Positions 1,238 to 25,878 are shown, numbered from the stretch's first letter. The stretch: 25,878 nucleotides of DNA from Macrostomum lignano (GCA_002269645.1 NIVC01005113.1:1-25878); one strand, 5' to 3'. The notes: generated by a model not told the origin, from the letters alone. Numbers and translations are program-made.

Positions 1238-1774
1238 CAGAGGCGCCGCAATGGATTTTAGGGTGGGGGACAAAGCCAAGAATTCTGCATATTTTACATG
1301 TACATGAGTAAATTCCTACATGTACATTAGTTTAAGAATGGTGCTGTCAGCGATTATTTTGGCGCCACAGACATGCACTCATTTTAGCGCCTCGGGCACT
1401 CATTTTAGCGCCCCAAGCACTCATTTTAGCGCCCCAGGCACTCATTTTAGCGCCACAGGCGTGCACTCATTTTAGCGCCACAGGCGTGCACTCATTTTAG
1501 CGCCACAGGCACTCATTTTAGCGCCACAGGCACTCATTTTAGCGCCACAGGCATGCACTTATTTTAGCGCCACAGGCACTCATTTTAGCGCCCCAGGCAC
1601 TCATTTTTGTGTCGCAGACACCATATATTTTGTCGCCCTGAAGCAAAATTATTGATTTCCATTACAGGTCAACAAAGGTGGGGTAGGGGGGACAAAGCAT
1701 TGGCATGTCCTCCCCCATAGCTCTTACTGCTGGGGGGACATGTCCCCCTGTCTCCCCTGGTGGCGACGCCCCTG
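1238..1774 (+). mobile_element. Non-autonomous MITE of the CAGGGGCG...CGCCCCTG type with an internal 21-bp minisatellite
   Basis: Imperfect terminal inverted repeats: CAGAGGCGCCGCAA at 1238 vs reverse complement of TGGCGACGCCCCTG ending 1774. Subterminal G/C palindrome GGGGGGACATGTCCCCC at about 1732-1748. No coding capacity. The left part is homologous to 19361-19487 (-) and the right part to 22596-22718 (+). No TSD identified. Confidence 0.7.
1352..1612. repeat. Minisatellite, unit GCACTCATTTTAGCGCCACAG (21 bp, some 25-bp variants), about 11-12 copies
   Basis: CACT(C/T)ATTTT recurs at 1376, 1397, 1418, 1439, 1464, 1489, 1510, 1531, 1556, 1577 and 1598. Confidence 0.95.
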
Positions 1775-2562: not shown

Positions 2563-2879
2563 CCGTTTGGGATTTTAAAAGGGGATGGGGCGACGGTGAG
2601 CACAAGCAATACTGTAAGTAAGCACAGGATGAGGAGGGGACAGCGCAAGAAAAGCGGGCTAACATGGTGAGTAAGACGAGGAATGCGAGAAGTACATGAT
2701 AAAGGGGTGGGGCGCTTGAAAAATGGGGAGGTAGGCGAGGTGCATAATGAAAAAGGGGCTCCGGAAGGGCACGTGTGGCTGAGTGGGAGACAGAACCGAG
2801 ACAGCAGGGGGTCGCAGCAGAGCGGGAGTCAGCTGGCCTGGTCAGGGGAGCCACCCTAGCGGCGGGCATTATCACTGAA

Positions 2880-3850
2880 GACTTAATCGCTCGTGCGGTC
2901 AGAACCATCAAGCCCTTCAAATCTCCTGGACCTGATGGTATCTACCCTGTTCTTCTTCGTGAAGCAGCCAAGATACCCTCGTTCTTGAGACTTACCCGCA
3001 ATCTCATGCGGGCCTCTATCCAGATGGGATACGTTCCCAAGTGCTGGACCAAATCTCGGGTAGTCTTCATTCCCAAACCCGGGAGGGTGAACTACCAGAG
3101 CGTCAAGGCCTTTAGGCCAATTAGCTTAACGTCAGCAATGCTTAAGCTCACTGAGAGGCTTATTCTCTGGCGGCTGCTTTCTTGCGAGCTGACAGCAATG
3201 CCTCTTAGAAATCATCAGCACGCCTTCCGTACCGGGAGGTCGACTGACAGCGCCCTGCATGCGATTGTCGAGAAGATTGAACGGGCGGTACTGGGTGACG
3301 GTAACGCCCTGGCTCTTTTTCTCGACATTGTTGGCGCCTTCGACAACGTTATCTTTGAAGTGTTTCAGAGGGCCTTCAAAACCGCAAAGCTCACGCTACC
3401 CTCATGCGGTGGATCATGTACATGATCTCTAACCGTACGGTCACTGCCCAACTTCTTGGGCAAACTGCCTCCGCCAGAGTCTGTAAGGGTGGACCCCAAG
3501 GCGGAGTCCTCACCCCGACGCTCTGGAACCTGGTCATGGACGCTCTTCTGGGTGACTCCAGACCTGATCCCGTCTTCAAAGTCGGGTATGCAGACGACGT
3601 CACTGCCATTTTGTCTGGGCCGTTCCCCAGCACGGTCAGGGATCTGATGCAGAGCTTTATCCGCAAAACAGAATCCTGGGCCAATGACAACGGTCTGGAA
3701 CTCTCTGAGCCCAAAACTGTTGCCATTATGTTCACCAGCAGAATACGCTGGAACATACGACCTCTGCAGTTATACGGCAGAGATATTGCCTTCGCGCACC
3801 AGACCAGATGTCTTAGGGTCATACTTGACCACCGGCTCAACTGGTCCTTC
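2880..3850 (+). pseudogene. Reverse transcriptase domain of the non-LTR element (one frameshift near 3400)
   Basis: ORFs 2775-3425 and 3404-4210. The YADD catalytic motif is encoded at 3587-3598 and the PQGG motif lies upstream. Confidence 0.92.
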
Positions 3851-4402
3851 CACGTGAAAGCAAAAGCCAAGCGTGCCTCAGCCATCCTGGCCCAGCTCCG
3901 ACGAGCACTTGGCACTTCTTGGGGTCTATCCCCAAAGCGGCTTTGGTGGATCTACACTTCCGTAGTTAGACCCGCCATTACGTACGCCTCGGTTGTCTGG
4001 GTTAGCGCTACCCAGGTCAAAAGCCATGCAGATTTGCTCAACACGATCCAGGGCAGAGCGTGTAGGCTCATCTGCAACGCCACCAGGTCCACGCCCTTTG
4101 CCGGCATGGGGCCTTCCTTAATCTACCGCCTCTCGACCTCTTCGTCAGGGGTGAGGCGGCTAGAACGATGCGGCGCTTACTTGATGCCGGTGTCAAATTC
4201 CTTTACATGAGGGCAACTGCTAAGCGGAACCTCGTCCCGCATAGCGACCTGTGCCTCAACATCCTCAACGAGTGTCAGGCCAATCGCGTCTTCACCGATG
4301 GCATTGCCTCAACAACGCTCAACCTGAGAACAACGCTACTCCGTAGCTATCGACTCGCGCGATACCATCAATGACCACTGGAACCCCGGTGAGCTTCATT
4401 GC

Positions 4403-4777
4403 TACACCGACGGTTCTAAGCAGTCAGCCAACACCGGTTTTGGTGTTGGAATCTTCCTGAACGAGAGGGTCATCGCAACCCACGCTCAATACACTGGGGT
4501 CAACTCCAGTGTCTTCCAAAATGAAGTTCTCGCCATCAGCTCCTGCACTGCAGAGCTCCTCGCCACTGGCGTAACCGGTAAGAACATCATTTTCCATTCG
4601 GACAGCCAAGCTGCCTTGCACGCCATCAGTGGCTGTAGTACCAATTCTGCTACAGTCCTCAACTGTATCAAACTCCTCAACATGTTGGATTCCACCAACA
4701 AAATCACCCTTAAGTGGGTTCCGGGGCATGTGGGGATCCGAGGAAATGAGTTGGCTGACGCCCTTGCAAAAGTTGGC
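4403..4777 (+). pseudogene. RNase H domain of the non-LTR element
   Basis: In the frame of ORF 4616-5173, extended upstream: YTDGS (TAC at 4403), FQNEV, FHSDSQAAL, WVPGHVGIRGNELAD. All four D/E/D/D catalytic residues are present. Confidence 0.9.
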
Positions 4778-5914
4778 GTTTCTGGCTCCTCTCTCGGTCC
4801 CGAACCCCTTGTTCCGATTCCTGGCTGTGTCATCGACTCGCGCATCAAAGCGTGGATCAGGACCCAGCACCGCTCGACTTGGGCGAACTGCACTACATGC
4901 AGGCAATTCAAAGGCGCTGTCCCTCAGCCCTCTCACCAGCTCCGGAAGCTCCTCTTGCGCCTCTCGCGCAGAGACATCCGGGCTGCCACCATGACCCTCT
5001 CTGGTCACGGCTGCTTCTCCAGGCACCAGTACCTGCAGGGCAACGCCACCAACGCCATCTGCAGTTTCTGTAACTCAGGTGACGAAACCGCTGAGAATTT
5101 CGTCAGCATCTGTCCCGCCTTTACGCGAGCCAGACTCACTTACCTCGGGCCACACACGTACATCTATTACTGAAGCGTGCAAACCCGAAAACTTTAATCA
5201 GCTCATGCGCTGCCTCCGGGCCACCACCCGCAGGGCCGAACTCTCCTTTCTAGAGAGCACTATAGCTGCTGGCGACACTGGGGGACCTCCCTGGGGGGCG
5301 CCAACCCTTCGTCTATAGCGACGTGTCGGCCGTTCAGGGATTAGCGGAATAGGCGTTCGCGCCTTCCCGCTGTGTCCCCCCGGGACAGCCCTGCAGCTAA
5401 GTCAAGTAAGTCATGCACCGCTACGTCAACTACTATACGTCTAGTAGACAACTACTACGTCGCAAGTAACTATGTTGAAATATGGCTTAATGCATCAGCT
5501 ATTGTGAGTGACAATCCATGTGGTACTCAATACTTGAAAGCATTGGCTATAATGGACATGGAGGCAGCAGTAACCAAAGCCCAGAGTGAGAAATTAAGCC
5601 AAAAAAACTTTTAGATATCATTCTGATGCTACTACGACATTTCGTTCGTAAAAGCAATTATCATCATCAACGCCCTAAAAATGTCTAAAAACGCCCTAAA
5701 ATTCATGAATGATTAAGAAAATATTGTATTCACTGTCTATAATTATATGGGCTCCGTAGAAAAATACACAAAATACTACTCACACAAGAACACTCCAGCT
5801 ATATTGTTCCAGTCAATAAAAAAAAACTAACACAGAGGCTCTCATTTCATTTTTCATTGTGGGAGAAACCAGAGTTCATAGAGCATAGCACCGATTGGTT
5901 GAGTAGCAAACGGT

Positions 5915-6412
5915 TCAATAACTTCCGCCCTTGTTCCAACGCTGTCCGCTCTTGTTCCAGCGCTGTCCACCTTTGTTCCAACGTTGTCCGCCCTTGTTCC
6001 AGCGCTGCCCACCTTTGTTCCAACGTTGTCCGCCCTTGTTCCAGCGCTGCCCACCTTTGTTCCAACGTTGTCCGCCCTTGTTCCAGCGCTGCCCACCTTT
6101 GTTCCAACGTTGTCCGCCCTTGTTCCAGCGCTGTCCGCCCTTGTTCCACTGTCCGCCCTTGTTCCAGCGCTGTCCGCCCTTGTTCCAACGTTGTCCGCCC
6201 TTGTTCCAGCGCTGTCCGCCCTTGTTCCAACGTTGTCCGCCCTTGATCCAACGTTGTCCGCCCTTGTTCCAGCGCTGACCGCCCTTGTGCTTTCTGCTCC
6301 AGTCGATGGCTCTGACGCCGGAGCTATCAGGCAGATTGGCGGCCGCGATGGCGCACAAAAGCGCCGCAGTGGCCGCCAGAAGAAGAAGATGCCTCGAAGA
6401 CTTTGTCGGCAT
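5915..6412 (-). CDS. Secreted Gly/Trp/basic repeat protein: signal peptide, short spacer, 17 x GGQRWNK (165 aa)
   Basis: The ATG is followed by a typical signal peptide (MPTKSSRHLLLLAATAALLCAIAAA). Recurrent repeat variants are synonymous in this frame (GGC/GGT, GGA/GGG/GGT, CAA/CAG, CGT/CGC, AAG/AAA), and the only indel is an in-frame 3-bp loss. An AG acceptor-like site lies 1 nt upstream of the ATG. No family recognised. Confidence 0.8.
   Translation of the reverse strand: MPTKSSRHLLLLAATAALLCAIAAANLPDSSGVRAIDWSRKHKGGQRWNKGGQRWIKGGQRWNKGGQRWNKGGQRWNKGGQRWNKGGQWNKGGQRWNKGGQRWNKGGQRWNKGGQRWNKGGQRWNKGGQRWNKGGQRWNKGGQRWNKGGQRWNKSGQRWNKGGSY
5921..6285. repeat. Coding 21-bp tandem repeat (17 units, partly alternating as a 42-bp dimer)
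   Basis: Units TTGTTCCAACGTTGTCCGCCC and TTGTTCCAGCGCTGCCCACCT on the + strand. Confidence 0.97.
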
Positions 6413-6834
6413 TCTGTTTGCTTGAAGCAGATACCTTGGTCAGTTAGCAAAAATGTTTACCTGTGAGTTCTGAGTGCAATATACATCGGTTATTTATGCT
6501 GAATTTGAAGAAGCACACGATAGATTGATTACGCAAACGCACCTGCAACAGAGCGTTGATGCCAGGTGAGTATTCAGATGCGTTGAGACAGTCTCAAATT
6601 GACAGGAATTCAACAATTTGGCCAAATTAATAGTAAGCCTGGCTTGACTTTGCCAGGTGCAAACCGCTAATTAGCCAAATTTATTAATTTATTCCAGTCA
6701 AGAAGCAGCTCGTATTAATTAGCAGTGCGCGTCAAAAATATTTGATCTGCTACGGAAGGAAAGCGAGTTTGCGAGGAAATTCTTAGAGACCTCACAATTT
6801 TTCCGGCGATAAAAACTAAAAAAAACTCATTTTT

Positions 6835-7312
6835 AATGTGAGGGAGGTCAATGTGAGGGAGGTCAGTGTGAGGGAGGTCAGTGTGAGGGAGGTCAGTGTG
6901 AGGGAGGTCAGTGTGAGGGAGGTCAGCGTGAGAGAGGTCAGTGTGAGGGAGGTCAGTGTGAGGTAGGTCAGTGTGAGGGAGGTCAATGTGAGGGGGTCAG
7001 TGTGAGGGAGGTCAGTGTAAGGGAGGTCAGTGTGATGGAGGTCAGTGTGAGGGAGGTCAGTGTGAGGGAGGTCAATGTGAGGGGGTCAGTTTAAGGGAGG
7101 TCAGTGTGAGGGAGGTCAGTGTGAGGTAGGTCAGTGTAAGGGAGGTCAGTGTGAGGGAGGTCAATGTGAGGGGGTCAGTGTGAGGGAGGTCAGTGTAAGG
7201 GAGGTCAGTGTGAGGTAGGTCAATGTGAGGGTGGTCAATGTGATGGAGGTCAGCGTGATGGAGGTCAGTGTGAGGGTCAGAGTGAGGGAGGTGGGGGAGG
7301 TGAGTGAGGGAG
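6835..7312. repeat. 15-bp minisatellite TGTGAGGGAGGTCAG, about 30 copies, degenerating to the right
   Basis: Direct tandem repeat visible in the sequence. Confidence 0.97.
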
Positions 7313-7922: not shown

Positions 7923-8246
7923 TCACCGCTTTTTACCAGCCCGTCTATTATCAAGCCTTCTTTTATTTCCCGCAAATTTATTGTTAAACTTTGACTTCGA
8001 GTTAACGTGGCGAATCTTCTCAACCTTGCCGCTATTGTTGGCAGCCGATGATTGGGCCTTCTTATTTCTGGCAGCCTTCCTGCCCGCACCGCCGGAGCCT
8101 GTTATGCGCAGCCTGGCTCGCTCGGCGATTTTGTCGGCTCGTTCGCGAACTTTCGCTTCGGCCCGATCCGCTTGCAGCCGGGCGTAGCCGACTGGCCGCT
8201 TCTTGGCGACGCGGGCGCCCATAGCAACCAGGAGGCGAGCGCGAAC
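7923..8246 (-). CDS. FSAF1: FSAF1/C1orf131 (DUF4602, Faf1-like small-subunit processome factor) homolog, last exon
   Basis: Acceptor TTTTATAATCTCAG| at 8247, phase 0, in frame with ORF 7923-8222. Spliced to the upstream exon it reads DVLKSQCLMLEGKEKRK|VRARLLVAMGARVAKKRPVGYARLQ. This aligns without gaps to the recalled human core [42 protein letters not shown]. Confidence 0.62.
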   Translation of the reverse strand, partial: VRARLLVAMGARVAKKRPVGYARLQADRAEAKVRERADKIAERARLRITGSGGAGRKAARNKKAQSSAANNSGKVEKIRHVNSKSKFNNKFAGNKRRLDNRRAGKKR

Positions 8247-8351: not shown

Positions 8352-9329
8352 ATCTCACTAATAAAGGACTAATAGAAAGCTACGTTTCTCACTAATGAGT
8401 GGCTAATAGAAAACTCAACCTCACTAATGAATGACTAATAGAAAACTCAAATCTCACTAGTGAATGGCTAATAGAAAACTCAACCTCACTAATGAATAGC
8501 TAATAGAAAACTCAAACCTCACTAATGAATGGCTAATAGAAAACTCAAACCTCACTAATGAGTGGCTAATAGAAAACTCAAACCTCACTAATGAGTGGCT
8601 AATAGAAAACTCAAACCTCACTAATGAGTGGCTAATAGAAAACTCAACCTCACTAATGAGTGGCTAATAGAAAACTCAAACCTCACTAATGAATGGCTAA
8701 TAGAAAACTCAAACCTCACTAATGAGTGGCTAATAGAAAACTCAAACCTCACTAATGAGTGGCTAATAGAAAACTCAACCTCACTAATGAATAGCTAATA
8801 GAAAACTCAAACCTCACTAATGAATGGCTAATAGAAAACTCAAACCTCACTAATGAGTGGCTAATAGAAAACTCAAATCTCACTAGTGAATGGCTAATAG
8901 AAAACTCAAATCTCACTAGTGAATGGCTAATAGAAAACTCAAACCTCACTAATGAGTGGCTAATAGAAAACTCAAACCTCACTAATGAGTGGCTAATAGA
9001 AAACTCAAACCTCACTAATGAGTGGCTAATAGAAAACTCAAACCTCACTAATGAGTGGCTAATAGAAAACTCAACCTCACTAATGAGTGGCTAATAGAAA
9101 ACTCAAACCTCACTAATGAGTGGCTAATAGAAAACTCAAACCTCACTAATGAGTGGCTAATAGAAAACTCAAACCTCACTAATGAGTGGCTAATAGAAAA
9201 CTCAACCTCACTAATGAATAGCTAATAGAAAACTCAAACCTCACTAATGAATGGCCAATAGAAAACTCAATCAAACCTCACTAATGAGTGGCTAATAGAA
9301 AACTCAAACCTCACTAATGAATGGCTAAT
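8352..9329. repeat. Intronic 33-bp minisatellite TAGAAAACTCAAACCTCACTAATGAGTGGCTAA, about 29 copies (32-bp variants)
   Basis: Direct tandem repeat lying inside the predicted intron 8247-9414. Confidence 0.97.
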
Positions 9330-9414
9330 GAAAGACTGCAAATCTTGGCTATGGCTGACTAAAGATATTGCAGAACAGCAGATTCAGACCACAGCTAGAT
9401 CAGAAATGCTTCAC

Positions 9415-9678
9415 CTTTCGTTTCTCTTTGCCCTCTAACATTAGGCATTGAGATTTGAGCACATCCACTCGAACAGATGCCAGTGGCGCCTGCAGCAGTT
9501 GGTTCAACTCAGCATCCAACGGCGCATCATCGCCATCAGTAGTCGCTTTTTTGGCAGTAGATTTTTCGCCAGACTGTTTTCTTCGAGATGACAAATCGAA
9601 GTGAGCAAAATCTGGGGCAAGGCGAGGCTGCTTGACACCCGCCGATGGGGGCTGCTTTTTTGCTGCTTTCTTTGCCAT
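9415..9678 (-). CDS. FSAF1: FSAF1/C1orf131-like gene, upstream coding exon (MAKKAAKK...LEGKEKRK)
   Basis: ATG at 9678 inside ORF 9400-9738, encoding a basic low-complexity N-terminus. The donor AAG|GTGAAG at 9414 is phase 0 and matches the acceptor phase at 8247. Predicted product is 195 aa; further upstream exons are possible. Confidence 0.58.
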
Positions 9679-10494
9679 GAGACAGTTAAAGTAAAAACTG
9701 TATATTACTGCTAGACCAATACAGGTACTTATTGACAAGAGATTGAATAATTTTTATATTTATGATACAGTGATTAGACCAGACCTCCCACTATTCCCAC
9801 TTCACGTAAATTGTTTATACTATATGTGTATTGATGTTATTTCCCTGCGTGGAAATCCTTATTTTGCCCCTTACTGTATTTTGGGTTTCCATCCTCTATA
9901 TTTTGTTTTACTGTTAATTTGAATAGGGTTACACAGAGTTTTTAGTCACTACCACCACCCAGAGTATCCAATTTTTCCATTGCATCAAATTCTCTTTCCA
10001 ACTGGGGTAACCCCTCTCCTTCCAGTGGCTCATGAGAGCAAGAGCCTGAGTCCCTTTTTTTATCAGCCAGACTTAAATGGAATACCCATATTCATGACTC
10101 CAATATTTGAGGACCCTAATTGTAAGCCCCTACTACCCTAACCCAACCAGGTCCTTTCCCAACAATACCCCTAATTGCGACTAACTAATTACCTAAGTGT
10201 TATTAAATAATAAATTAATCTCAATTGTGATAAAATTTCCAGATTTGCAACTAATAATTAAGGTACCAGTATAATAAATTTATCCTAAGCTGTTATTTGA
10301 GCCTTTATGACCTTAGGAAGCATTTATCAATTCTTGATAATCTAATTAAGTGGAGTTCTTAGGCAAATTTGAGCTAATTGTATTTCAGAATCTTCTTTGT
10401 GAATTACTAGTGGTAGAATCAAACTAACAACTTTTAGTATAATACTCAGTGAATTTAGCTTATTCTGGTTTTGTGGTAGACATAGCTAATATAC

Positions 10495-15500: not shown

Positions 15501-16280
15501 TCACACGTGAATCCGTTTGTACTTCATCCATTGCAGCATCTCTTCGTTGTTGGCAGAAAAGCCGGAGTCACTCAGCGGCAGGCTGGCGTCAAAGTAAGGC
15601 AGCAGAACGCACTGCCTCCTCACCGGGTGCCAGTAGTATCCGATGCAGTCCTCAAACTCGAACACAAGACAGACCTGGGAGCAGTGGAAGTGAGTTTTAG
15701 CCCTTGGTTCCTTGATCCAGCAGCCCGGGTCGGGTTGATTGTACGCGACGATTTCCGTGCGAACGAATTTACTTGTGGTCGCTTTGTTAGCGATTCGGTT
15801 GGCCACAGCGGCATCCTCGTAGCAGAGAACGTTGTTTAGATCATTGCAAGTCTCGTCCCTCAGCTTTCTTTCTGAGTCACTTTTTATTGTCACACAGTCT
15901 TGGCTGCTGTCCTGATTATTTGGTTCCGTACTTAGGAAATATGACCCACTACCATCCGTGACCTGGCCATCCTTGATCCAAACCCAGCCGTCTTTCTGAG
16001 TGCCTCTCTCGTTCAGCGCATCGACCAGTCCGACCCACCATCTGTCACCAGAAAAGCTCGCAGCCGTCATGGCGTCGTGCACAGACTTGCTGATCATCTC
16101 CTGACCGTGGTCGTGACAAATCCTAATAGCATCGCAGAATGTCACCTGTTTATCGTAATTCTTGACACACCAAGACTTTCCAGAATTGTTGACCGCAATC
16201 AACCCGCCAGAACAAGTCGCGGCAACAGAGGCAGTCATTAACAGAAGGGCAGCTACCATTGGAAGGAGTAGAAATGCCAT
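15501..16280 (-). CDS. Secreted C-type lectin domain protein with C-terminal PAN/apple-like module (259 aa, single exon)
   Basis: Signal peptide MAFLLLPMVAALLLMTASVAA. CTLD cysteines, WWVGL, GWVW, EPN motif, DC, and LRD at the WND position. The C-terminal C-x3-C-x7-C-x2-Y-x-W-x6-C-x-L fits the PAN core. Confidence 0.9.
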   Translation of the reverse strand: MAFLLLPMVAALLLMTASVAATCSGGLIAVNNSGKSWCVKNYDKQVTFCDAIRICHDHGQEMISKSVHDAMTAASFSGDRWWVGLVDALNERGTQKDGWVWIKDGQVTDGSGSYFLSTEPNNQDSSQDCVTIKSDSERKLRDETCNDLNNVLCYEDAAVANRIANKATTSKFVRTEIVAYNQPDPGCWIKEPRAKTHFHCSQVCLVFEFEDCIGYYWHPVRRQCVLLPYFDASLPLSDSGFSANNEEMLQWMKYKRIHV

Positions 16281-21929: not shown

Positions 21930-22595
21930 GCCTGCGGCAAGCATCTGAGCCCAAACTTCCTGCGGGCAAACTTCCTGCGGGCAAACTTCCTGCGGGCTAA
22001 TTTCCTGCGGGCAAACTTCCTGCGGGCAAACTTCCTGCGGGCAAACTTCCCTCGGGCAAACTTCCCTCGGGCAAACTTCCTGCGGGCTAATTTCCTGCGG
22101 GCAAACTTCCTGCGGGCAAACTTCTTGCGGGCAAACTTCTTGCGGGCAAACTTCTTGCGGGCAAACTTCCTGCGGGCAAACTTCCTGCGGGCAAACTTCC
22201 TGCGGGCAAACTTCTTGCGGGCAAACTTCCTGCGGGCAAACTTCCTGCGGGCAAACTTCTTGCGGGCAAACTTCCTGCGGGCAAACTTCCTGCGGGCAAA
22301 CTTCTTGCGGGCAAACTTCCTGCGGGCAAACTTCCTGCGGGCAAACTTCCTGCGGGCAAACGTCTGCGGGCAAACTTCCTGCGGCCAAACTTCCTGCGGC
22401 CAAACTTCCTGCGGCCAAACTTCCTGCGGGCAAACTTCCTGCGGGCAAACTTCCTGCGGGCAAACGGCCTGTGGGCAAACTTCCTGCGGGCAAACTTCCT
22501 GCGGGCAAACGTCTGCGGGCAAACGGCCTGCGGGCAAACGTCTGCGGGCAAACTTCCCTTTGGGCTAATTTCCTGTGGGCTAATGTCATAGACCC
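21930..22595. repeat. 15-bp minisatellite TTCCTGCGGGCAAAC, about 42 copies, ending in a MULE-like terminus
   Basis: Direct tandem repeat terminating in GGGCTAATGTCATAGACCC (22577-22595). Confidence 0.97.
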
Positions 22596-22718: not shown

Positions 22719-23176
22719 TCCGCGTTTATACCCATTCAATGCACAGAGTAGTCTTGATTTAAAACAAAATCATGATTACGAATTCGACCAAAACTGCAAT
22801 AAATTTTTGATAAGAAACTTTTCAAAAGCAGATTACCATCCAAAAAGCACCGTTTCAACGCAGAAAGCTTTCAAATTGTTCAAAATTTTCAGTCTGCATG
22901 ATTGACGTTCAAAATTACGACAAGAGAGACACTGGATTGCTTTTAGCTGTCAGGATGTGAAAGTCCCAGCTAATGCGTGTCAAGAAAAATGAGAAGGTTC
23001 CGGATATGCTGTAGTCGTAGATAATGGGCCCAAAAGTGAGTCACTTATGCCTAAACCAGCAGCCATCTGTCATTTACGGAAACAGCAGAAATCGATATTT
23101 CCGTTTAAAAGCAGCTGCATCAGAAAGAAAGCGTCAAAACCATATCTGAGTTTTCTGGTTGCAAGACAGCAGGAAA

Positions 23177-24094
23177 ATGCACTGCAACTCTAACATTATC
23201 ACGCTTTGTGCTCTGTCGCTGGCACAGCTGGCGCTCTCGGCCGAGTACGAAACCTCGACAGGCGGCTGCGTGGTGCCGCAGACTCCGCAGCACTCGCTGA
23301 CGTCCTCGAGCGCCCGCATGTGCGCCTTCCTGTGCTCTCAGCTCCGTCGTCCCTGCATCGCCTGGAGCCACCGCGCAGGCGTCTGCAACATGTCGGACAG
23401 CCTCCAGACCGCCAGTCTGACGAACGACACCGACTGCCAGTCGTGGAGCGCCCTGCTCCAGCTCGGCCTCGTCGCCTTCTGGCCCATGAGCAACGCCACT
23501 CGGACTCGCAATGCGGTCTCGAACAGCGGCCATCTCGACCTGCAGGAGAACATCCCGATGCAGTACACGGACAGCGCCGTCAACTTCACTGGTCAGTCGG
23601 GTGTGTCAGAGAGGTTCAACATTGACCAGCTGACTTCGGTGTGTCTCACCAGCCTCACCATGTCAGTGTGGGTCAAGGTCACCAATGCGTCAAGGGGTTC
23701 GATGCCTCTGCTGGAGGGCCTCACCATGCCTTCTTCAGCTCACACTCGATTATTTCTTTATCCAACAACTACCGACATCGAGTTCACCGTTTCGTCGTCG
23801 ACGGTCTCAGTGTCTGGACCCACCGACACGGCCAGCGGTTGGACCCACATCGCCGCGGTGTACGACAAGCAGACTCCAGAAATCAGGATCCTCGTCAACG
23901 GAACTCGACAGGCCACCAGCGGCTCGGCCACCGCTTTGACCTCGTGCGCGGACTTCGGCAGCAGCGTGCAGATCGGAGCCGTCAGCCGCATTATCAGCCA
24001 CAACCGCGTGTTCCAAGGCTACATGAGATGCTTCGGAGTGTCGGAGAGAGCTCTGAGCGACTCCGAAGTTGCTCTGCTGCAGGGACTGTGTTGA
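23177..24094 (+). CDS. Secreted PAN/apple + LamG/concanavalin A-like (pentraxin-like fold) protein (305 aa, single exon)
   Basis: ATG at 23177 within ORF 23159-24094, then signal peptide MHCNSNIITLCALSLAQLALS. Six-Cys PAN-like module (C-x3-C-x6-C-x2-W-x6-C). LamG-like motifs LVAFWPM, LTMSVWVK, WTHIAAVYD, LVNG, QIG, FQGYM, RALS. Confidence 0.88.
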   Translation: MHCNSNIITLCALSLAQLALSAEYETSTGGCVVPQTPQHSLTSSSARMCAFLCSQLRRPCIAWSHRAGVCNMSDSLQTASLTNDTDCQSWSALLQLGLVAFWPMSNATRTRNAVSNSGHLDLQENIPMQYTDSAVNFTGQSGVSERFNIDQLTSVCLTSLTMSVWVKVTNASRGSMPLLEGLTMPSSAHTRLFLYPTTTDIEFTVSSSTVSVSGPTDTASGWTHIAAVYDKQTPEIRILVNGTRQATSGSATALTSCADFGSSVQIGAVSRIISHNRVFQGYMRCFGVSERALSDSEVALLQGLC

Positions 24095-24547
24095 GAACAT
24101 TTGTATGGATCGAAGCTTAACTTCTAACGAAAGTTATTTGTACTTTAATCAGCCATACTTTTTTCTGTAGTCTTGAAAGTTGTCCAGTACAATTAGTTGT
24201 CTGTTAGCCGTCTGCCCCTATCTATTTTATCATATATATTTAATTGTTCATGTATAATAATTGTAAATTTACTATAGCTAGAATCTGGGTCAAGGTCTAA
24301 CACTGTCGCTCTATTCCTTTTGTTCCTAACTACTTTGTAGGGCATGTTACCTGGGTGTTTGTGCAAATTTTACTGATACTTTTTACTCTACTCTCATTAT
24401 TTACTTTTACCAGCTTGCATACCTCTGCAATGCGGACCAATGTGACAATATAATGAGCAAATATATCCTGCAAACGTCAATATGAAATAGATGGTAAACC
24501 ATCGATCGAACTATAACAGAATTGTTCTTAGCTTTAACTGCACCGAT

Positions 24548-24959
24548 TCCCCAACCATACATTCCCCACACAACCATTCCCCACACACCCATTCCCCACA
24601 CACCCATTCCCCACAAACCCATTCCCCACACACCAATTCCCCACACACCAATTCCCCACACACCAATTCCCCACACACCCAGATCCCCACACACCCATTT
24701 TCCACACACCCATTCCCCACACACCCATTCCCCACACAACCATTCCCCACACACCAATTCCCCACACACCAATTCCCCACACACCAATTCCCCACATACC
24801 CATTTCCCACACACCAATTCCCCACACACCCATTCCCCACACACCCATTCTCCACACACCCATTCCCCACACACCAATTCCCCACACACCAATTCCCCAC
24901 ATACCCATTCCCGACACACCCATTCCACACACCTATTCCCCACACCCCGATTCCTACCC
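24548..24959. repeat. 15-bp minisatellite ATTCCCCACACACC(A/C), about 27 copies
   Basis: Direct tandem repeat; the right end reads GGGTAGGAATCGGGG on the minus strand. Confidence 0.96.
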
Positions 24960-25280
24960 AGGTTTACAAACTGTCCGAGGAAAAACGAAAGAAACTGAAG
25001 CTTTTGGCAGTAATATAGATTTCGAAATTCTAGTAGTATACAAGAGGGCCTTTAATTATTTTATTTACACTGTTGCTTAAATCTCACGAAATCCATACCT
25101 CGAATCGTCAGTGCCTTGTAGATTCGCCCCCCCCGTTGTCACATGTAGTTCTTCCTTACTGTAAAAAGCACAGATACATAATACTCGAGCTAATTAATTG
25201 AGCTCACGAAAATGGAGTATAGCTACTTTCTGCCAAAATTTTTACAATTTCCTGTTGGCAAACTAGTTCTCACTAGTTAT

Positions 25281-25499
<219 letters not shown>

Positions 25500-25538: not shown

Positions 25539-25878
25539 GAGGGAAAGATAAGAGAGGAGAGAGAAGAGTAGAGAGAGAGGGAGAGAGGAGAGAAGGAGAG
25601 AGGAGAGGAGGAGAGAGTAGGGAGGAGAGAAGAGAGAAGAGAGAAGAGGGAAGAGATGCGAGAGTAGAAAGTAGAGAGAGGAGGAAGAGAGAAGAGAGCA
25701 AAAATGAGAGAGGAGAGAGGAGAGAGAAGACAGGAGAGAGAAGGAAGGAGAGAGAAGAAAGGAGAGAAAAAAGAGGAAAGAGAGTGAGAAGAGATCAGCA
25801 GGAGAGAGGAGAGAGAATTAAGAGAGGAGAAAAGAAACAGAGATGATGAGATGATGAGATAATATATGAGATGAGAAA
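25539..25878. repeat. GA-rich polypurine low-complexity tract running to the window end
   Basis: Irregular AG/GAG/AGAGG repeats with almost no pyrimidines on the + strand. Confidence 0.95.

What the first reader, a model, noticed from the sequence alone, without database searches (positions are those of the whole stretch)
5915..6412. Minisatellite that is really a secreted (GGQRWNK)17 protein under purifying selection
Seen: ATG, a hydrophobic signal peptide, an 18-aa spacer ending in RKHK, then 17 units and a stop. Five of the seven codons vary recurrently between units, always at the wobble position. There are only two one-off amino-acid changes (N>I, G>S), and the single indel removes exactly one codon. 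The window's non-coding arrays show no such pattern. The polymer carries +2 charge and one Trp per 7 residues. Inference: it could be a cationic antimicrobial, a cation-pi adhesive or coacervating secretion, a gland/seminal product, or a multi-copy peptide precursor. R-W-N-K is an RxxK-type site that would release GGQRWN; there is no Gly-Lys/Arg amidation signal, so it is not a classical amidated neuropeptide. I do not recognise the family, and repeat masking could easily hide such a gene.
Basis: partly seen in the sequence, partly recalled or inferred. Interest (0 to 1): 0.82.

Follow-up and report, generated by a model that had tools for sequence, protein, structure and literature searches.

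The report
Hidden secreted heptad-repeat protein gene
A 21-base minisatellite in what is probably the flatworm Macrostomum lignano very likely encodes a small, secreted, strongly positively charged, tryptophan-rich repeat protein with no known relatives, but nothing yet shows that it is expressed or what it does.

Summary
Window 5915-6412 (minus strand) holds an ATG, a signal-peptide-like N-terminus, an 18-residue spacer ending in RKHK, 17 GGQRWNK units, a GGSY tail and a stop.

The coding reading holds up.
- Of six frames, GGQRWNK fits the unit variants best: 6 synonymous, 2 replacement, no stop.
- The only indel removes exactly one codon.
- The N-terminus is the only one of 128 ATG-ORFs in the window to pass a strict signal-peptide test.
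- The five other arrays with 3n periods all carry frameshifting indels and show no codon-phase bias.

The array is a 42-bp higher-order repeat, so there are only 8 independent variants.

No homologue, Pfam family, solved structure or literature mention was found. AlphaFold predicts the repeats to be disordered. A neighbouring retrotransposon fragment is 92% identical to a Macrostomum lignano sequence. That species has many orphan gland-secreted proteins, and its adhesive protein uses Lys/Arg-rich repeats.

Best reading: a lineage-restricted secreted polycation (about 16 kDa, pI 12, charge about +35) that binds polyanions. I put the gene being real at about 0.8. Tissue and function are inferred only. 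It is a new member of a known kind, of moderate interest.

The parts
5915..6412 (-). Complete 165-codon ORF (ATG at 6410-6412, TGA at 5915-5917) encoding the predicted secreted repeat protein
   Evidence: An in-frame stop lies 10 codons upstream of the ATG.
6338..6412 (-). Predicted signal peptide, residues 1-25 (MPTKSSRH / LLLLAATAALLCAIAAA). It has 2 positive charges in the n-region, a 17-residue h-region, and an A-x-A cleavage motif.
   Evidence: Crude von Heijne-type test: the only pass among 128 ATG-ORFs in the window, against 1.9% of shuffled ORFs. AlphaFold puts a helix at 5-25. SignalP itself was not available.
6284..6337 (-). 18-residue spacer or possible propiece, NLPDSSGVRAIDWSRKHK. 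It holds the only dibasic pair (RK, residues 40-41).
   Evidence: Together with the signal peptide, GC3 is 0.70 against GC1/GC2 of 0.53/0.56, as in the window's two domain-bearing ORFs.
5930..6283 (-). 17 tandem 21-nt units encoding GGQRWNK. Unit 2 has N>I, unit 7 lacks the Arg codon, and unit 17 has G>S.
5951..6118 (-). Units 9-16: four near-identical copies of a 42-bp dimer (GGC GGA CAA CGT TGG AAC AAA / GGT GGG CAG CGC TGG AAC AAG), which indicates recent amplification
   Evidence: TRF gives 93% matches at period 42 against 82% at period 21. Unit table.
5915..5929 (-). C-terminal tail GGSY plus the stop codon (a truncated 18th unit)
6491..6498 (-). TATA-like CATAAATA, about 80 nt upstream of the ATG (read by eye; weak evidence)
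   Evidence: Sequence.
6470..6473 (-). Initiator-like TCAG, 25 nt downstream of the T of the TATA-like element. No ATG lies between it and the start codon, and there is an A at -3 of the ATG (read by eye; weak evidence).
   Evidence: Sequence.
5846..5858 (-). Two AATGAA variant poly(A)-signal candidates, 57-70 nt after the stop and followed by a T9 run (5818-5826). There is no canonical AATAAA on this strand.
   Evidence: Sequence. Inference only.

Best explanation
The 21-bp minisatellite is the body of a real, lineage-restricted, single-exon protein-coding gene on the minus strand. The host genome is most likely that of the free-living flatworm Macrostomum lignano or a close relative.

Predicted product:
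- A cleavable signal peptide (residues 1-25) sends it into the secretory pathway.
- The mature protein has about 140 residues and about 16 kDa, with pI about 12 and net charge about +35. Its composition is about 26% Gly and about 13% each of Trp, Arg and Lys.
- It is an intrinsically disordered polymer of GGQRWNK heptads.

Inferred mechanism: it works outside the cell as a multivalent polycation. Arg and Lys bind polyanions such as sulfated or carboxylated glycans, charged surfaces and microbial envelopes. The regularly spaced Arg-Trp pairs add cation-pi and pi-pi cohesion. The protein would condense or glue a gland secretion, in the way the Lys/Arg-rich repeat regions of the species' own adhesive protein Mlig-ap1 are proposed to act.

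Origin and evolution: the gene grows and shrinks by unequal exchange of 21- and 42-bp units, and selection keeps the peptide unit and the reading frame.

Shown here: the ORF anatomy, the frame-specific synonymous bias, the in-frame indel, the signal-peptide-like N-terminus, the predicted disorder and the lack of homologues.

Inferred: transcription, secretion, tissue and mechanism.

My probabilities: genuine coding gene about 0.8; secreted about 0.75; polyanion-binding cohesive or adhesive-type gland material about 0.4.
For: (1) The ORF has an ATG, an upstream in-frame stop, and its own stop just after the array.

(2) Of the 8 distinct unit variants, 6 are synonymous, 2 are replacements and none makes a stop in the GGQRWNK frame. 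This is the best of the six frames. P(>=6/8 synonymous) is 0.001-0.003.

(3) The independent signal-peptide test picks the same frame. It is the only pass among 128 ATG-ORFs in the window, with a 1.9% shuffled background. A relaxed hydrophobic-N-terminus scan finds only this ORF, the C-type lectin ORF and one doubtful ORF.

(4) The only indel is a codon-exact 3-nt deletion. All five other 3n-period arrays have frameshifting indels and no phase bias.

(5) TGG, the one codon in the unit with no synonymous alternative, never varies.

(6) GC3 of the unique N-terminal part is 0.70, above GC1/GC2, as in the window's lectin and LamG ORFs.

(7) AlphaFold predicts helix 5-25 and gives the repeats pLDDT 45-50, meaning disorder.

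(8) Species context:
- A neighbouring reverse-transcriptase ORF is 92% identical to a M. lignano UniRef entry.
- M. lignano Mlig-ap1 has Gly/Arg/Lys-rich repeats that bind negatively charged sugars (PMC6410801; PMC8621496).
- 31 of 76 prostate-limited transcripts in that species have no BLAST hit, and 38 of 65 carry signal peptides (PMC5977470).
Against: - There is no transcript, protein or orthologue evidence of any kind. No hit came from 5.8 billion clustered or 1.84 billion representative proteins, apart from unrelated heptad repeats. Nothing was found in metagenome, prokaryote or viral contigs.
- The selection signal rests on only 8 variants, two of which (columns 9 and 12) are almost always linked.
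- About half of the array is a very recent amplification that carries no information on constraint.
- All six frames are open across the array.
- About 15% of the M. lignano genome is simple or tandem repeats (PMC5730564), so some chance look-alikes are expected genome-wide.
- There is no canonical AATAAA downstream. The promoter elements were read by eye.
- Known M. lignano adhesive proteins are giant multidomain proteins, unlike this small domain-free one.
- At one hydrophobic residue in seven, the polymer is very hydrophilic.
Confidence: 0.5

Rival explanations
1. The gene is real and its product secreted, but the product is a host-defence molecule. It would be a cationic Gly/Trp/Arg-rich antimicrobial protein, possibly released from a short acidic propiece at the RK site. 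It would bind and disrupt anionic microbial membranes, as Gly/aromatic-rich invertebrate peptides are thought to do.
For: Arg plus Trp is the classic membrane-active pairing (own knowledge). The layout of signal peptide, short Asp-containing spacer, dibasic RK and then a cationic body resembles a prepropeptide. Nematode NLP/caenacin peptides are secreted, lineage-restricted, Gly/aromatic-rich, and carry YGGWG/YGGYG motifs (PMC6780910).
Against: The mature part is about 140 residues, much longer than typical antimicrobial peptides. GRAVY is about -2.2 with only 1 hydrophobic residue in 7. It has no YGGWG/YGGYG motif, and there is no evidence of inducibility. The cited review itself notes that direct antimicrobial tests of NLP/CNC peptides were lacking.
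Confidence: 0.2
2. It is a non-coding minisatellite. The ORF, the signal-peptide-like N-terminus and the third-position bias are coincidences in a genome that is about 15% tandem repeats.
For: All six frames are open across the array. The window alone holds at least seven other arrays. M. lignano is very rich in tandem repeats (PMC5730564). There are only 8 informative variants. The protein is absent from every protein collection searched, one of which holds at least one M. lignano UniRef entry. There is no canonical poly(A) signal.
Against: Three independent features point to the same one of six frames: synonymous bias at P about 0.001-0.003, signal-peptide-likeness at about 2% background, and a codon-exact indel. 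Every other 3n-period array in the window has frameshifts and no phase bias. The unique N-terminal part has a coding-like GC3 excess.
Confidence: 0.17
3. It is a multi-copy peptide precursor. The polymer would be cut into many identical short peptides, such as GGQRWN(K), that act as signalling or bioactive peptides.
For: A signal peptide followed by many identical units is the architecture of multi-copy peptide precursors. There is a basic residue at every unit boundary.
Against: There are no dibasic KR/RR/KK pairs and no RxxR sites between units, and no Gly-basic amidation donors. The only dibasic pair is RK at 40-41. A P1 Lys in R-x-x-K is not a canonical convertase site (own knowledge). Units follow each other with no spacer residues between them.
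Confidence: 0.06
4. The constrained frame is the + strand frame (PPLFQRC/LFQRCPP). It shares the same wobble positions and would be an exon of a + strand gene.
For: 5 of the 8 variants are synonymous in this frame too. The frame is open across the array.
Against: The ORF (5931-6278) has no ATG and is confined to the array. The unit-1 variant makes a TGA in this frame. The position that is TTC/TTT-degenerate in this frame never varies, as expected only if TGG (Trp) on the other strand is what is constrained. It has no signal peptide or other flanking coding feature.
Confidence: 0.03

Closest known systems
Lys/Arg-rich ('GRK') repeat regions of the Macrostomum lignano adhesive protein Mlig-ap1
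   Same: Probably the same species. Both are secreted and are extremely cationic low-complexity repeats rich in Gly, Arg and Lys. The proposed mechanism is the same: binding negatively charged carbohydrates for cohesion (PMC6410801; PMC8621496).
   Different: Mlig-ap1 is over 5,000 aa with a C-type lectin/vWD/TIL/EGF core. Its KR regions have pI above 14, and no Trp is reported. The protein here is 165 aa, has no domain and has a strict Trp-containing heptad.
Mussel foot protein 1 of Perna viridis (Pvfp-1), a tandem-decapeptide adhesive with Trp and Lys
   Same: A secreted tandem short-repeat protein in which Trp (hydroxylated and mannosylated) together with Lys replaces the usual DOPA/Lys chemistry of marine adhesives (PMC4275877).
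   Different: It is not homologous. Pvfp-1 repeats are Pro/Thr-rich decapeptides with two Trp residues (own recollection of Zhao et al. 2009). The protein here has a Gly/Gln/Asn-rich heptad with one Trp and no WxxW motif. Any modifications are unknown.
Nematode NLP-29-type and caenacin Gly/aromatic-rich antimicrobial peptides (also armadillidin of woodlice, from own knowledge)
   Same: All have a signal peptide, are lineage-restricted, and are Gly-rich with regularly spaced aromatic and basic residues (PMC6780910).
   Different: Those are short peptides with YGGWG/YGGYG (or GGGFHR) motifs. Here there are 17 uninterrupted heptads, no such motif, and a much higher charge.
Orphan prostate-gland (putative seminal-fluid) proteins of M. 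lignano
   Same: They are small, often carry signal peptides and often lack any BLAST hit (31 of 76 transcripts; PMC5977470).
   Different: No sequence link was found. The heptad strings are absent from that paper's held supplements. The tissue of expression of this gene is unknown.

Membership tests
Any curated protein family (Pfam-A) | Match to a family profile at or above the gathering score | tested here: not met
   0 families at E<=0.01.
Any sequence-homologous protein family in public data | A significant, non-compositional match to another protein | tested here: not met
   There were no hits in the word-indexed search. The exhaustive phmmer search returned only unrelated heptad repeats (DISGQRV, GGRRWVR, GGRSWDR, LGNQRWT...), and the eight of these I looked up are singleton or two-member clusters from unrelated sources. 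In the PDB only engineered TPR proteins matched, at E>0.007. Degenerate DNA patterns found nothing in three contig collections.
Multi-copy (neuro)peptide precursor | N-terminal signal peptide | tested here: met
   Passes the heuristic signal-peptide test. SignalP was not available.
Multi-copy (neuro)peptide precursor | Peptide copies flanked by dibasic (KR/RR/KK/RK) or RxxR convertase sites | tested here: not met
   The only dibasic pair is RK at 40-41, there is no RxxR, and units abut directly.
Multi-copy (neuro)peptide precursor | C-terminal Gly followed by basic residues as amidation donor (for amidated peptides) | tested here: not met
   No G[KR] anywhere.
Mlig-ap1-type flatworm adhesive protein | Large Lys/Arg-rich repeat regions | tested here: inconclusive
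   K+R is about 26% and pI is 12, so it is cationic, but with a different, Trp-containing unit and on a far smaller scale than the more than 3,600 aa of KR regions.
Mlig-ap1-type flatworm adhesive protein | Core of C-type lectin, vWD/C8/TIL and EGF domains | tested here: not met
   No Pfam domain in the 165-aa protein.
Mlig-ap1-type flatworm adhesive protein | Expression in adhesive gland cells, and loss of adhesion on RNAi | not testable with these tools
   Needs in situ hybridisation and RNAi.
NLP-29 / caenacin Gly-aromatic antimicrobial peptides | YGGWG or YGGYG motifs in a short secreted peptide | tested here: not met
   No such motif in the sequence. The mature part is about 140 aa. The motif definition comes from PMC6780910.
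Pvfp-1-type Trp-based mussel adhesive | WxxW-type context for C-mannosylated or hydroxylated Trp in Pro/Thr-rich decapeptides | tested here: not met
   There is no WxxW, Trp residues are 7 apart, and the repeats contain no Pro or Thr.
Non-coding minisatellite | Unit variants and indels that ignore codon phase | tested here: not met
   All 5 recurrent variants fall at one codon phase, and the single indel is -3 and codon-exact. The other five 3n-period arrays in the window do behave as non-coding.

The most novel reading that the evidence does not exclude
A gene whose coding body is a minisatellite, possibly born from one, makes a previously undescribed type of extracellular material. This would be a domain-free, Trp-studded polycationic heptad polymer that self-associates or coacervates with polyanionic glycans through Arg/Lys-Trp cation-pi contacts. 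It would serve as a flatworm glue, egg-cement, mucus or seminal component. Three standard practices would miss it: repeat masking, short-read assembly, and tryptic proteomics, because trypsin would cut it to GGQR and WNK.
Probability: 0.2. Interest if true: 0.6.

Novelty: new member of a known kind. Interest (0 to 1): 0.4.

Why it matters
If the gene is expressed, it is a clean example of a protein-coding gene hidden inside a minisatellite. Several routine methods would tend to overlook such genes:
- Annotation pipelines that mask tandem repeats would skip it.
- Short-read transcriptome assemblies collapse such repeats.
- Trypsin-based proteomics cannot see it, because its tryptic peptides would be 3-4 residues long.

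About 15% of the M. lignano genome is simple or tandem repeats. The same frame-aware test could be run genome-wide to find more such genes. That test combines the codon phase of unit variants, in-frame indels, and an upstream ATG with a signal peptide.

The product itself is a regular Arg-Trp/Lys polycation. It would be a simple natural model for cation-pi driven adhesion or coacervation, or for Trp/Arg antimicrobial action, in an animal where RNAi, in situ hybridisation and transgenesis are routine.

Lineage-restricted, repetitive, secreted gland proteins are already a well-known category, so the conceptual surprise is modest.

Tried and rejected
Searches that found nothing relevant:
- Homologue search with the word-indexed 5.8-billion-cluster collection gave no hits.
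- The exact sequence, and those of three neighbouring ORFs, are not in the collection.
- The exhaustive phmmer search of 1.84 billion representatives gave 436 hits. Every hit I inspected (22 of the top 150) is another heptad or low-complexity repeat, not a relative.
- A degenerate DNA pattern for (GGQRWNK)2 had no hits in metagenome, prokaryotic-genome or viral contigs. The search for related loci on metagenomes matched 93 patterns, none confirmed.
- Pfam gave nothing. The PDB sequence search gave only irrelevant engineered repeat proteins.
- Rfam and tRNA scans of the window were empty.
- A full-text search for all six rotations of the heptad returned one chance string in an unrelated GPCR paper.
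- The heptad strings are absent from the held supplements of the M. lignano seminal-fluid and adhesion papers.
- A homologue search with the neighbouring C-type lectin ORF, run to identify the organism, gave nothing. The reverse-transcriptase ORF did identify it.

Ideas considered and dropped:
- A 47-nt intron just upstream of the ATG (GTAAAC...AAACAG), or a trans-splice acceptor there. The donor is GTAAA rather than the species' GT[G/A]AG, and the acceptor does not fit [T/C]TNCAG (PMC8629364).
- The 16-nt direct repeat flanking the gene as a target-site duplication of a retrocopy. The A/T run lies on the wrong side for either orientation.
- Fold search with the AlphaFold model was not run, because the model's confidence is too low (pLDDT 51) for matches to mean anything.

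Full report
**1. What is there**

On the minus strand, 6412-5915 reads as a 165-codon ORF. It consists of:
- ATG, then MPTKSSRH-LLLLAATAALLCAIAAA;
- NLPDSSGVRAIDWSRKHK;
- 17 tandem 21-nt units;
- GGSY and TGA.

Fourteen units encode GGQRWNK. Unit 2 is GGQRWIK, unit 17 is SGQRWNK, and unit 7 lacks exactly the CGC (Arg) codon. An in-frame stop lies 10 codons upstream of the ATG. TRF reports the array at 5924-6288 with period 21 (82% matches) and, scoring better, period 42 (93% matches).

**2. Is it more than chance?**

All six frames are open across the array, so an ORF by itself means nothing. Three further tests matter.

(a) Codon phase.
- The variable columns of the unit are 1, 3, 6, 9, 12, 17 and 21. 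The five that vary in more than one unit are all third codon positions of the GGQRWNK frame.
- There are 8 distinct variants. In the GGQRWNK frame, 6 are synonymous, 2 are replacements and none makes a stop. The other five frames give 0-5 synonymous.
- P(>=6 of 8 synonymous) is 0.001-0.003, depending on transition bias. After allowing for six frames it is roughly 0.01-0.02.
- TGG, the only codon in the unit with no synonymous alternative, never varies.

(b) Signal peptide.
- In a strict heuristic test (charged n-region, uncharged h-region of at least 10 residues with mean hydropathy of at least 2, small residues at -3/-1), this is the only pass among the window's 128 ATG-ORFs.
- 1.9% of ORFs from shuffled sequence pass.
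- A relaxed test finds only this ORF, the C-type lectin ORF and one doubtful ORF.
- This test selects the same frame as test (a).

(c) Contrast with the other arrays.
- The five other arrays with periods of 15, 21 or 33 all contain indels of +-1, 2 or 4 nt.
- Their recurrent variants are spread over all codon phases.

Minor supporting points:
- GC3 of the unique N-terminal 43 codons is 0.70, against 0.53/0.56 for GC1/GC2. This resembles the window's two domain-bearing ORFs.
- There is an A at -3 of the ATG.
- There is no upstream ATG after an initiator-like TCAG at 6470-6473. That element sits 25 nt below the T of a TATA-like CATAAATA at 6491-6498 (read by eye).

**3.

The array is a higher-order repeat.
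- Units 3-8 alternate or mix two types: CAA CGT ... AAG and CAG CGC ... AAG.
- Units 9-16 are four almost perfect copies of a 42-bp dimer that carries three further synonymous differences (AAA, GGT, GGG).
- Most of the 'recurrent' wobble variation is therefore a handful of old differences copied by recent amplification.
- About half of the array is too young to say anything about constraint.
- The evidence for purifying selection is real but rests on 8 events. Two of them (columns 9 and 12) are nearly always linked.

The proposed R-W-N-K processing site is not a canonical convertase site. The only dibasic pair is RK at residues 40-41, and there is no RxxR and no Gly-basic amidation donor.

It is nevertheless a weaker candidate:
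- it has no ATG and is confined to the array;
- it acquires a TGA from the unit-1 variant;
- its TTC/TTT-degenerate position, opposite the Trp codon, never varies.

**4. The organism and the neighbourhood**

The window is eukaryotic and rich in minisatellites.
- It holds a frameshifted non-LTR retrotransposon fragment with reverse transcriptase and RNase H at 2775-5173 (+).
- It holds a C-type lectin ORF with a signal peptide at 15501-16280 (-).
- It holds a Laminin_G_3 ORF at 23159-24094 (+).

The reverse-transcriptase ORF at 3404-4210 is 92% identical, over 44% of its length, to the transposon-derived part of UniRef A0A1I8H162 of Macrostomum lignano. The window therefore most likely comes from that free-living flatworm or a close relative. 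This is an inference from a mobile element, not proof.

In M. lignano, simple and tandem repeats make up 15% of the genome (PMC5730564). This lowers the prior that any single array is coding, and it raises the number of chance look-alikes expected genome-wide.

**5. Relatives**

None were found.
- The word-indexed search gave no hit, and the exact sequence is not in the 15-billion-protein collection.
- The exhaustive phmmer search returned 436 hits. I read 22 of the listed top 150, chosen among the best-scoring hits and those reaching the query's N-terminus. All 22 are other 7-residue or low-complexity repeats (DISGQRV, GGRRWVR, GGRSWDR, LGNQRWT, PQAWKQD...). The eight I looked up are singleton or two-member clusters from unrelated sources.
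- Degenerate DNA patterns for two units found nothing in metagenome, prokaryotic or viral contigs.
- Pfam, the PDB, Rfam and the literature gave nothing.

The protein collection contains at least one M. lignano UniRef protein, but I did not check how much of that species' gene set it holds. I could not test repeat masking as the cause, and I could not query the newer M. lignano transcriptome.

**6. The product**

- After removal of a 25-residue signal peptide, the protein would be about 140 residues and 16.4 kDa.
- It would have pI about 12 and net charge about +35.
- Its composition is about 26% Gly and 12-14% each of Trp, Arg, Lys, Gln and Asn.
- It has one N-K-S sequon and no Cys.
- AlphaFold (single sequence) predicts a helix at 5-25 and gives the repeats pLDDT 45-50, which means disorder.
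- Trypsin would reduce the repeats to GGQR and WNK, so standard proteomics could not detect it (direct inference from the sequence).

**7. How it most likely works**

I commit to the following reading. This is a genuine, lineage-restricted, single-exon gene (about 0.8). Its secreted product (about 0.75) is a disordered multivalent polycation. It binds polyanions through Arg and Lys, and gains cohesion from the regularly spaced Arg-Trp pairs through cation-pi and pi-pi contacts. It would be a component of a gland secretion of the adhesive, cohesive, cement, mucus or seminal type (about 0.4 for this class of mechanism).

The best within-species precedent is the adhesive protein Mlig-ap1.
- Its Gly/Arg/Lys-rich repeats make up two-thirds of the protein.
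- They are proposed to act by binding negatively charged sugars.
- Heparin-like sugars block attachment, and cationic peptides block release (PMC6410801; PMC8621496).

A precedent for Trp-plus-Lys repeats in a marine adhesive is Pvfp-1 of the green mussel (PMC4275877). Orphan secreted proteins are also common in the M. lignano prostate gland: 31 of 76 transcripts lack a BLAST hit (PMC5977470).

The main functional rival is a host-defence polycation (about 0.2). Analogues are the Gly/aromatic-rich nematode NLP/caenacin peptides (PMC6780910) and armadillidin (own knowledge). Against it stand the polymer's length and its extreme hydrophilicity.

The other rivals are a purely non-coding array (about 0.17), a peptide precursor (about 0.06), and + strand coding (about 0.03).

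**8. Membership and novelty**

It belongs to no known family. Every defining feature I could test was not met, for peptide precursors (processing and amidation sites), Mlig-ap1-type proteins (domain core), NLP/caenacins (motifs) and Pvfp-1 (WxxW, Pro/Thr decapeptides). The one exception is the signal peptide.

It works like a known kind of molecule: a taxon-restricted, secreted, tandem-repeat, low-complexity protein. I therefore rate it a new member of a known kind. The GGQRWNK unit itself appears to be undescribed.

**9. Verdict**

- The coding interpretation is well supported in silico, but no expression or orthologue data confirm it.
- The strength of selection was overstated.
- The function is open.
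- Interest is moderate (0.4). This is a tidy, testable hidden gene and a useful recipe for finding others, but not a conceptual surprise.

Noticed in passing
window 2775-5173 (+): A degraded non-LTR (LINE-type) retrotransposon. Its reverse transcriptase is split over two frames (2775-3425 and 3404-4210), with an RNase H part at 4616-5173. The 3404-4210 ORF is 92% identical to the transposon-derived part of a chimeric Macrostomum lignano gene model (UniRef A0A1I8H162, annotated as a WSC-domain protein). This is the only clue to the organism.
   Followed up: partly
window 5815-5826 (+): AATAAA followed by an A-run on the + strand, about 650 nt after the retrotransposon's last ORF. It may be the poly(A) end of that element. 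On the minus strand the same run is the T9 tract just after the candidate poly(A) signals of the repeat-protein gene, so the transposon may abut or define the gene's 3' end.
   Followed up: no
window 5804-5819 and 6689-6704: A 16-nt direct repeat (TTGTTCCAGTCAATAA / TTATTCCAGTCAAGAA, 88% identical) brackets the whole gene at 885-bp spacing. It also resembles part of the repeat unit (TTGTTCCAG). It is probably chance, and the orientation of the A/T run does not fit a retrocopy target-site duplication.
   Followed up: partly
window 15501-16280 (-): An intact single-exon 259-aa ORF with a hydrophobic N-terminus and a C-type lectin domain (Pfam E=4e-10), followed by a Cys-patterned C-terminal part that looks PAN/apple-like by eye. 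No homologue was retrieved by the word-indexed search.
   Followed up: partly
window 23159-24094 (+): A 311-aa ORF with a Laminin_G_3 (concanavalin A-like lectin) domain (E=5e-19) and very high GC3 (0.78). It begins at a TTG in the ORF listing, so its true start or an upstream exon was not defined.
   Followed up: no
window 1371-1607, 6837-7292, 8388-9342, 21952-22580, 24541-24954, 25274-25499, 25551-25816: Seven further tandem arrays, with periods of 21/46, 15, 33, 15, 15, 4 and 7/2. The five with 3n periods have open frames but carry frameshifting indels and no codon-phase bias, so they behave as non-coding minisatellites.
   Followed up: yes
window 7923-8222 (-) and 9400-9738 (-): Two ORFs of 99 and 112 aa encoding very basic Lys/Arg/Ala-rich sequences, in locally GC-rich DNA on either side of the 33-bp array. 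Neither has a Pfam match or an exact match in the protein collection. They could be exons of an unannotated gene or could be chance.
   Followed up: partly
P0057 (Exaiptasia diaphana KXJ07981.1), found: A sea-anemone protein built the same way at its N-terminus: signal peptide, a spacer ending in basic residues, then about 15 Trp/Lys-containing heptads (PQAWKQD). These are followed by what look by eye like SRCR and lectin-like domains. It is an unrelated example of a secreted Trp/Lys heptad repeat.
   Followed up: no
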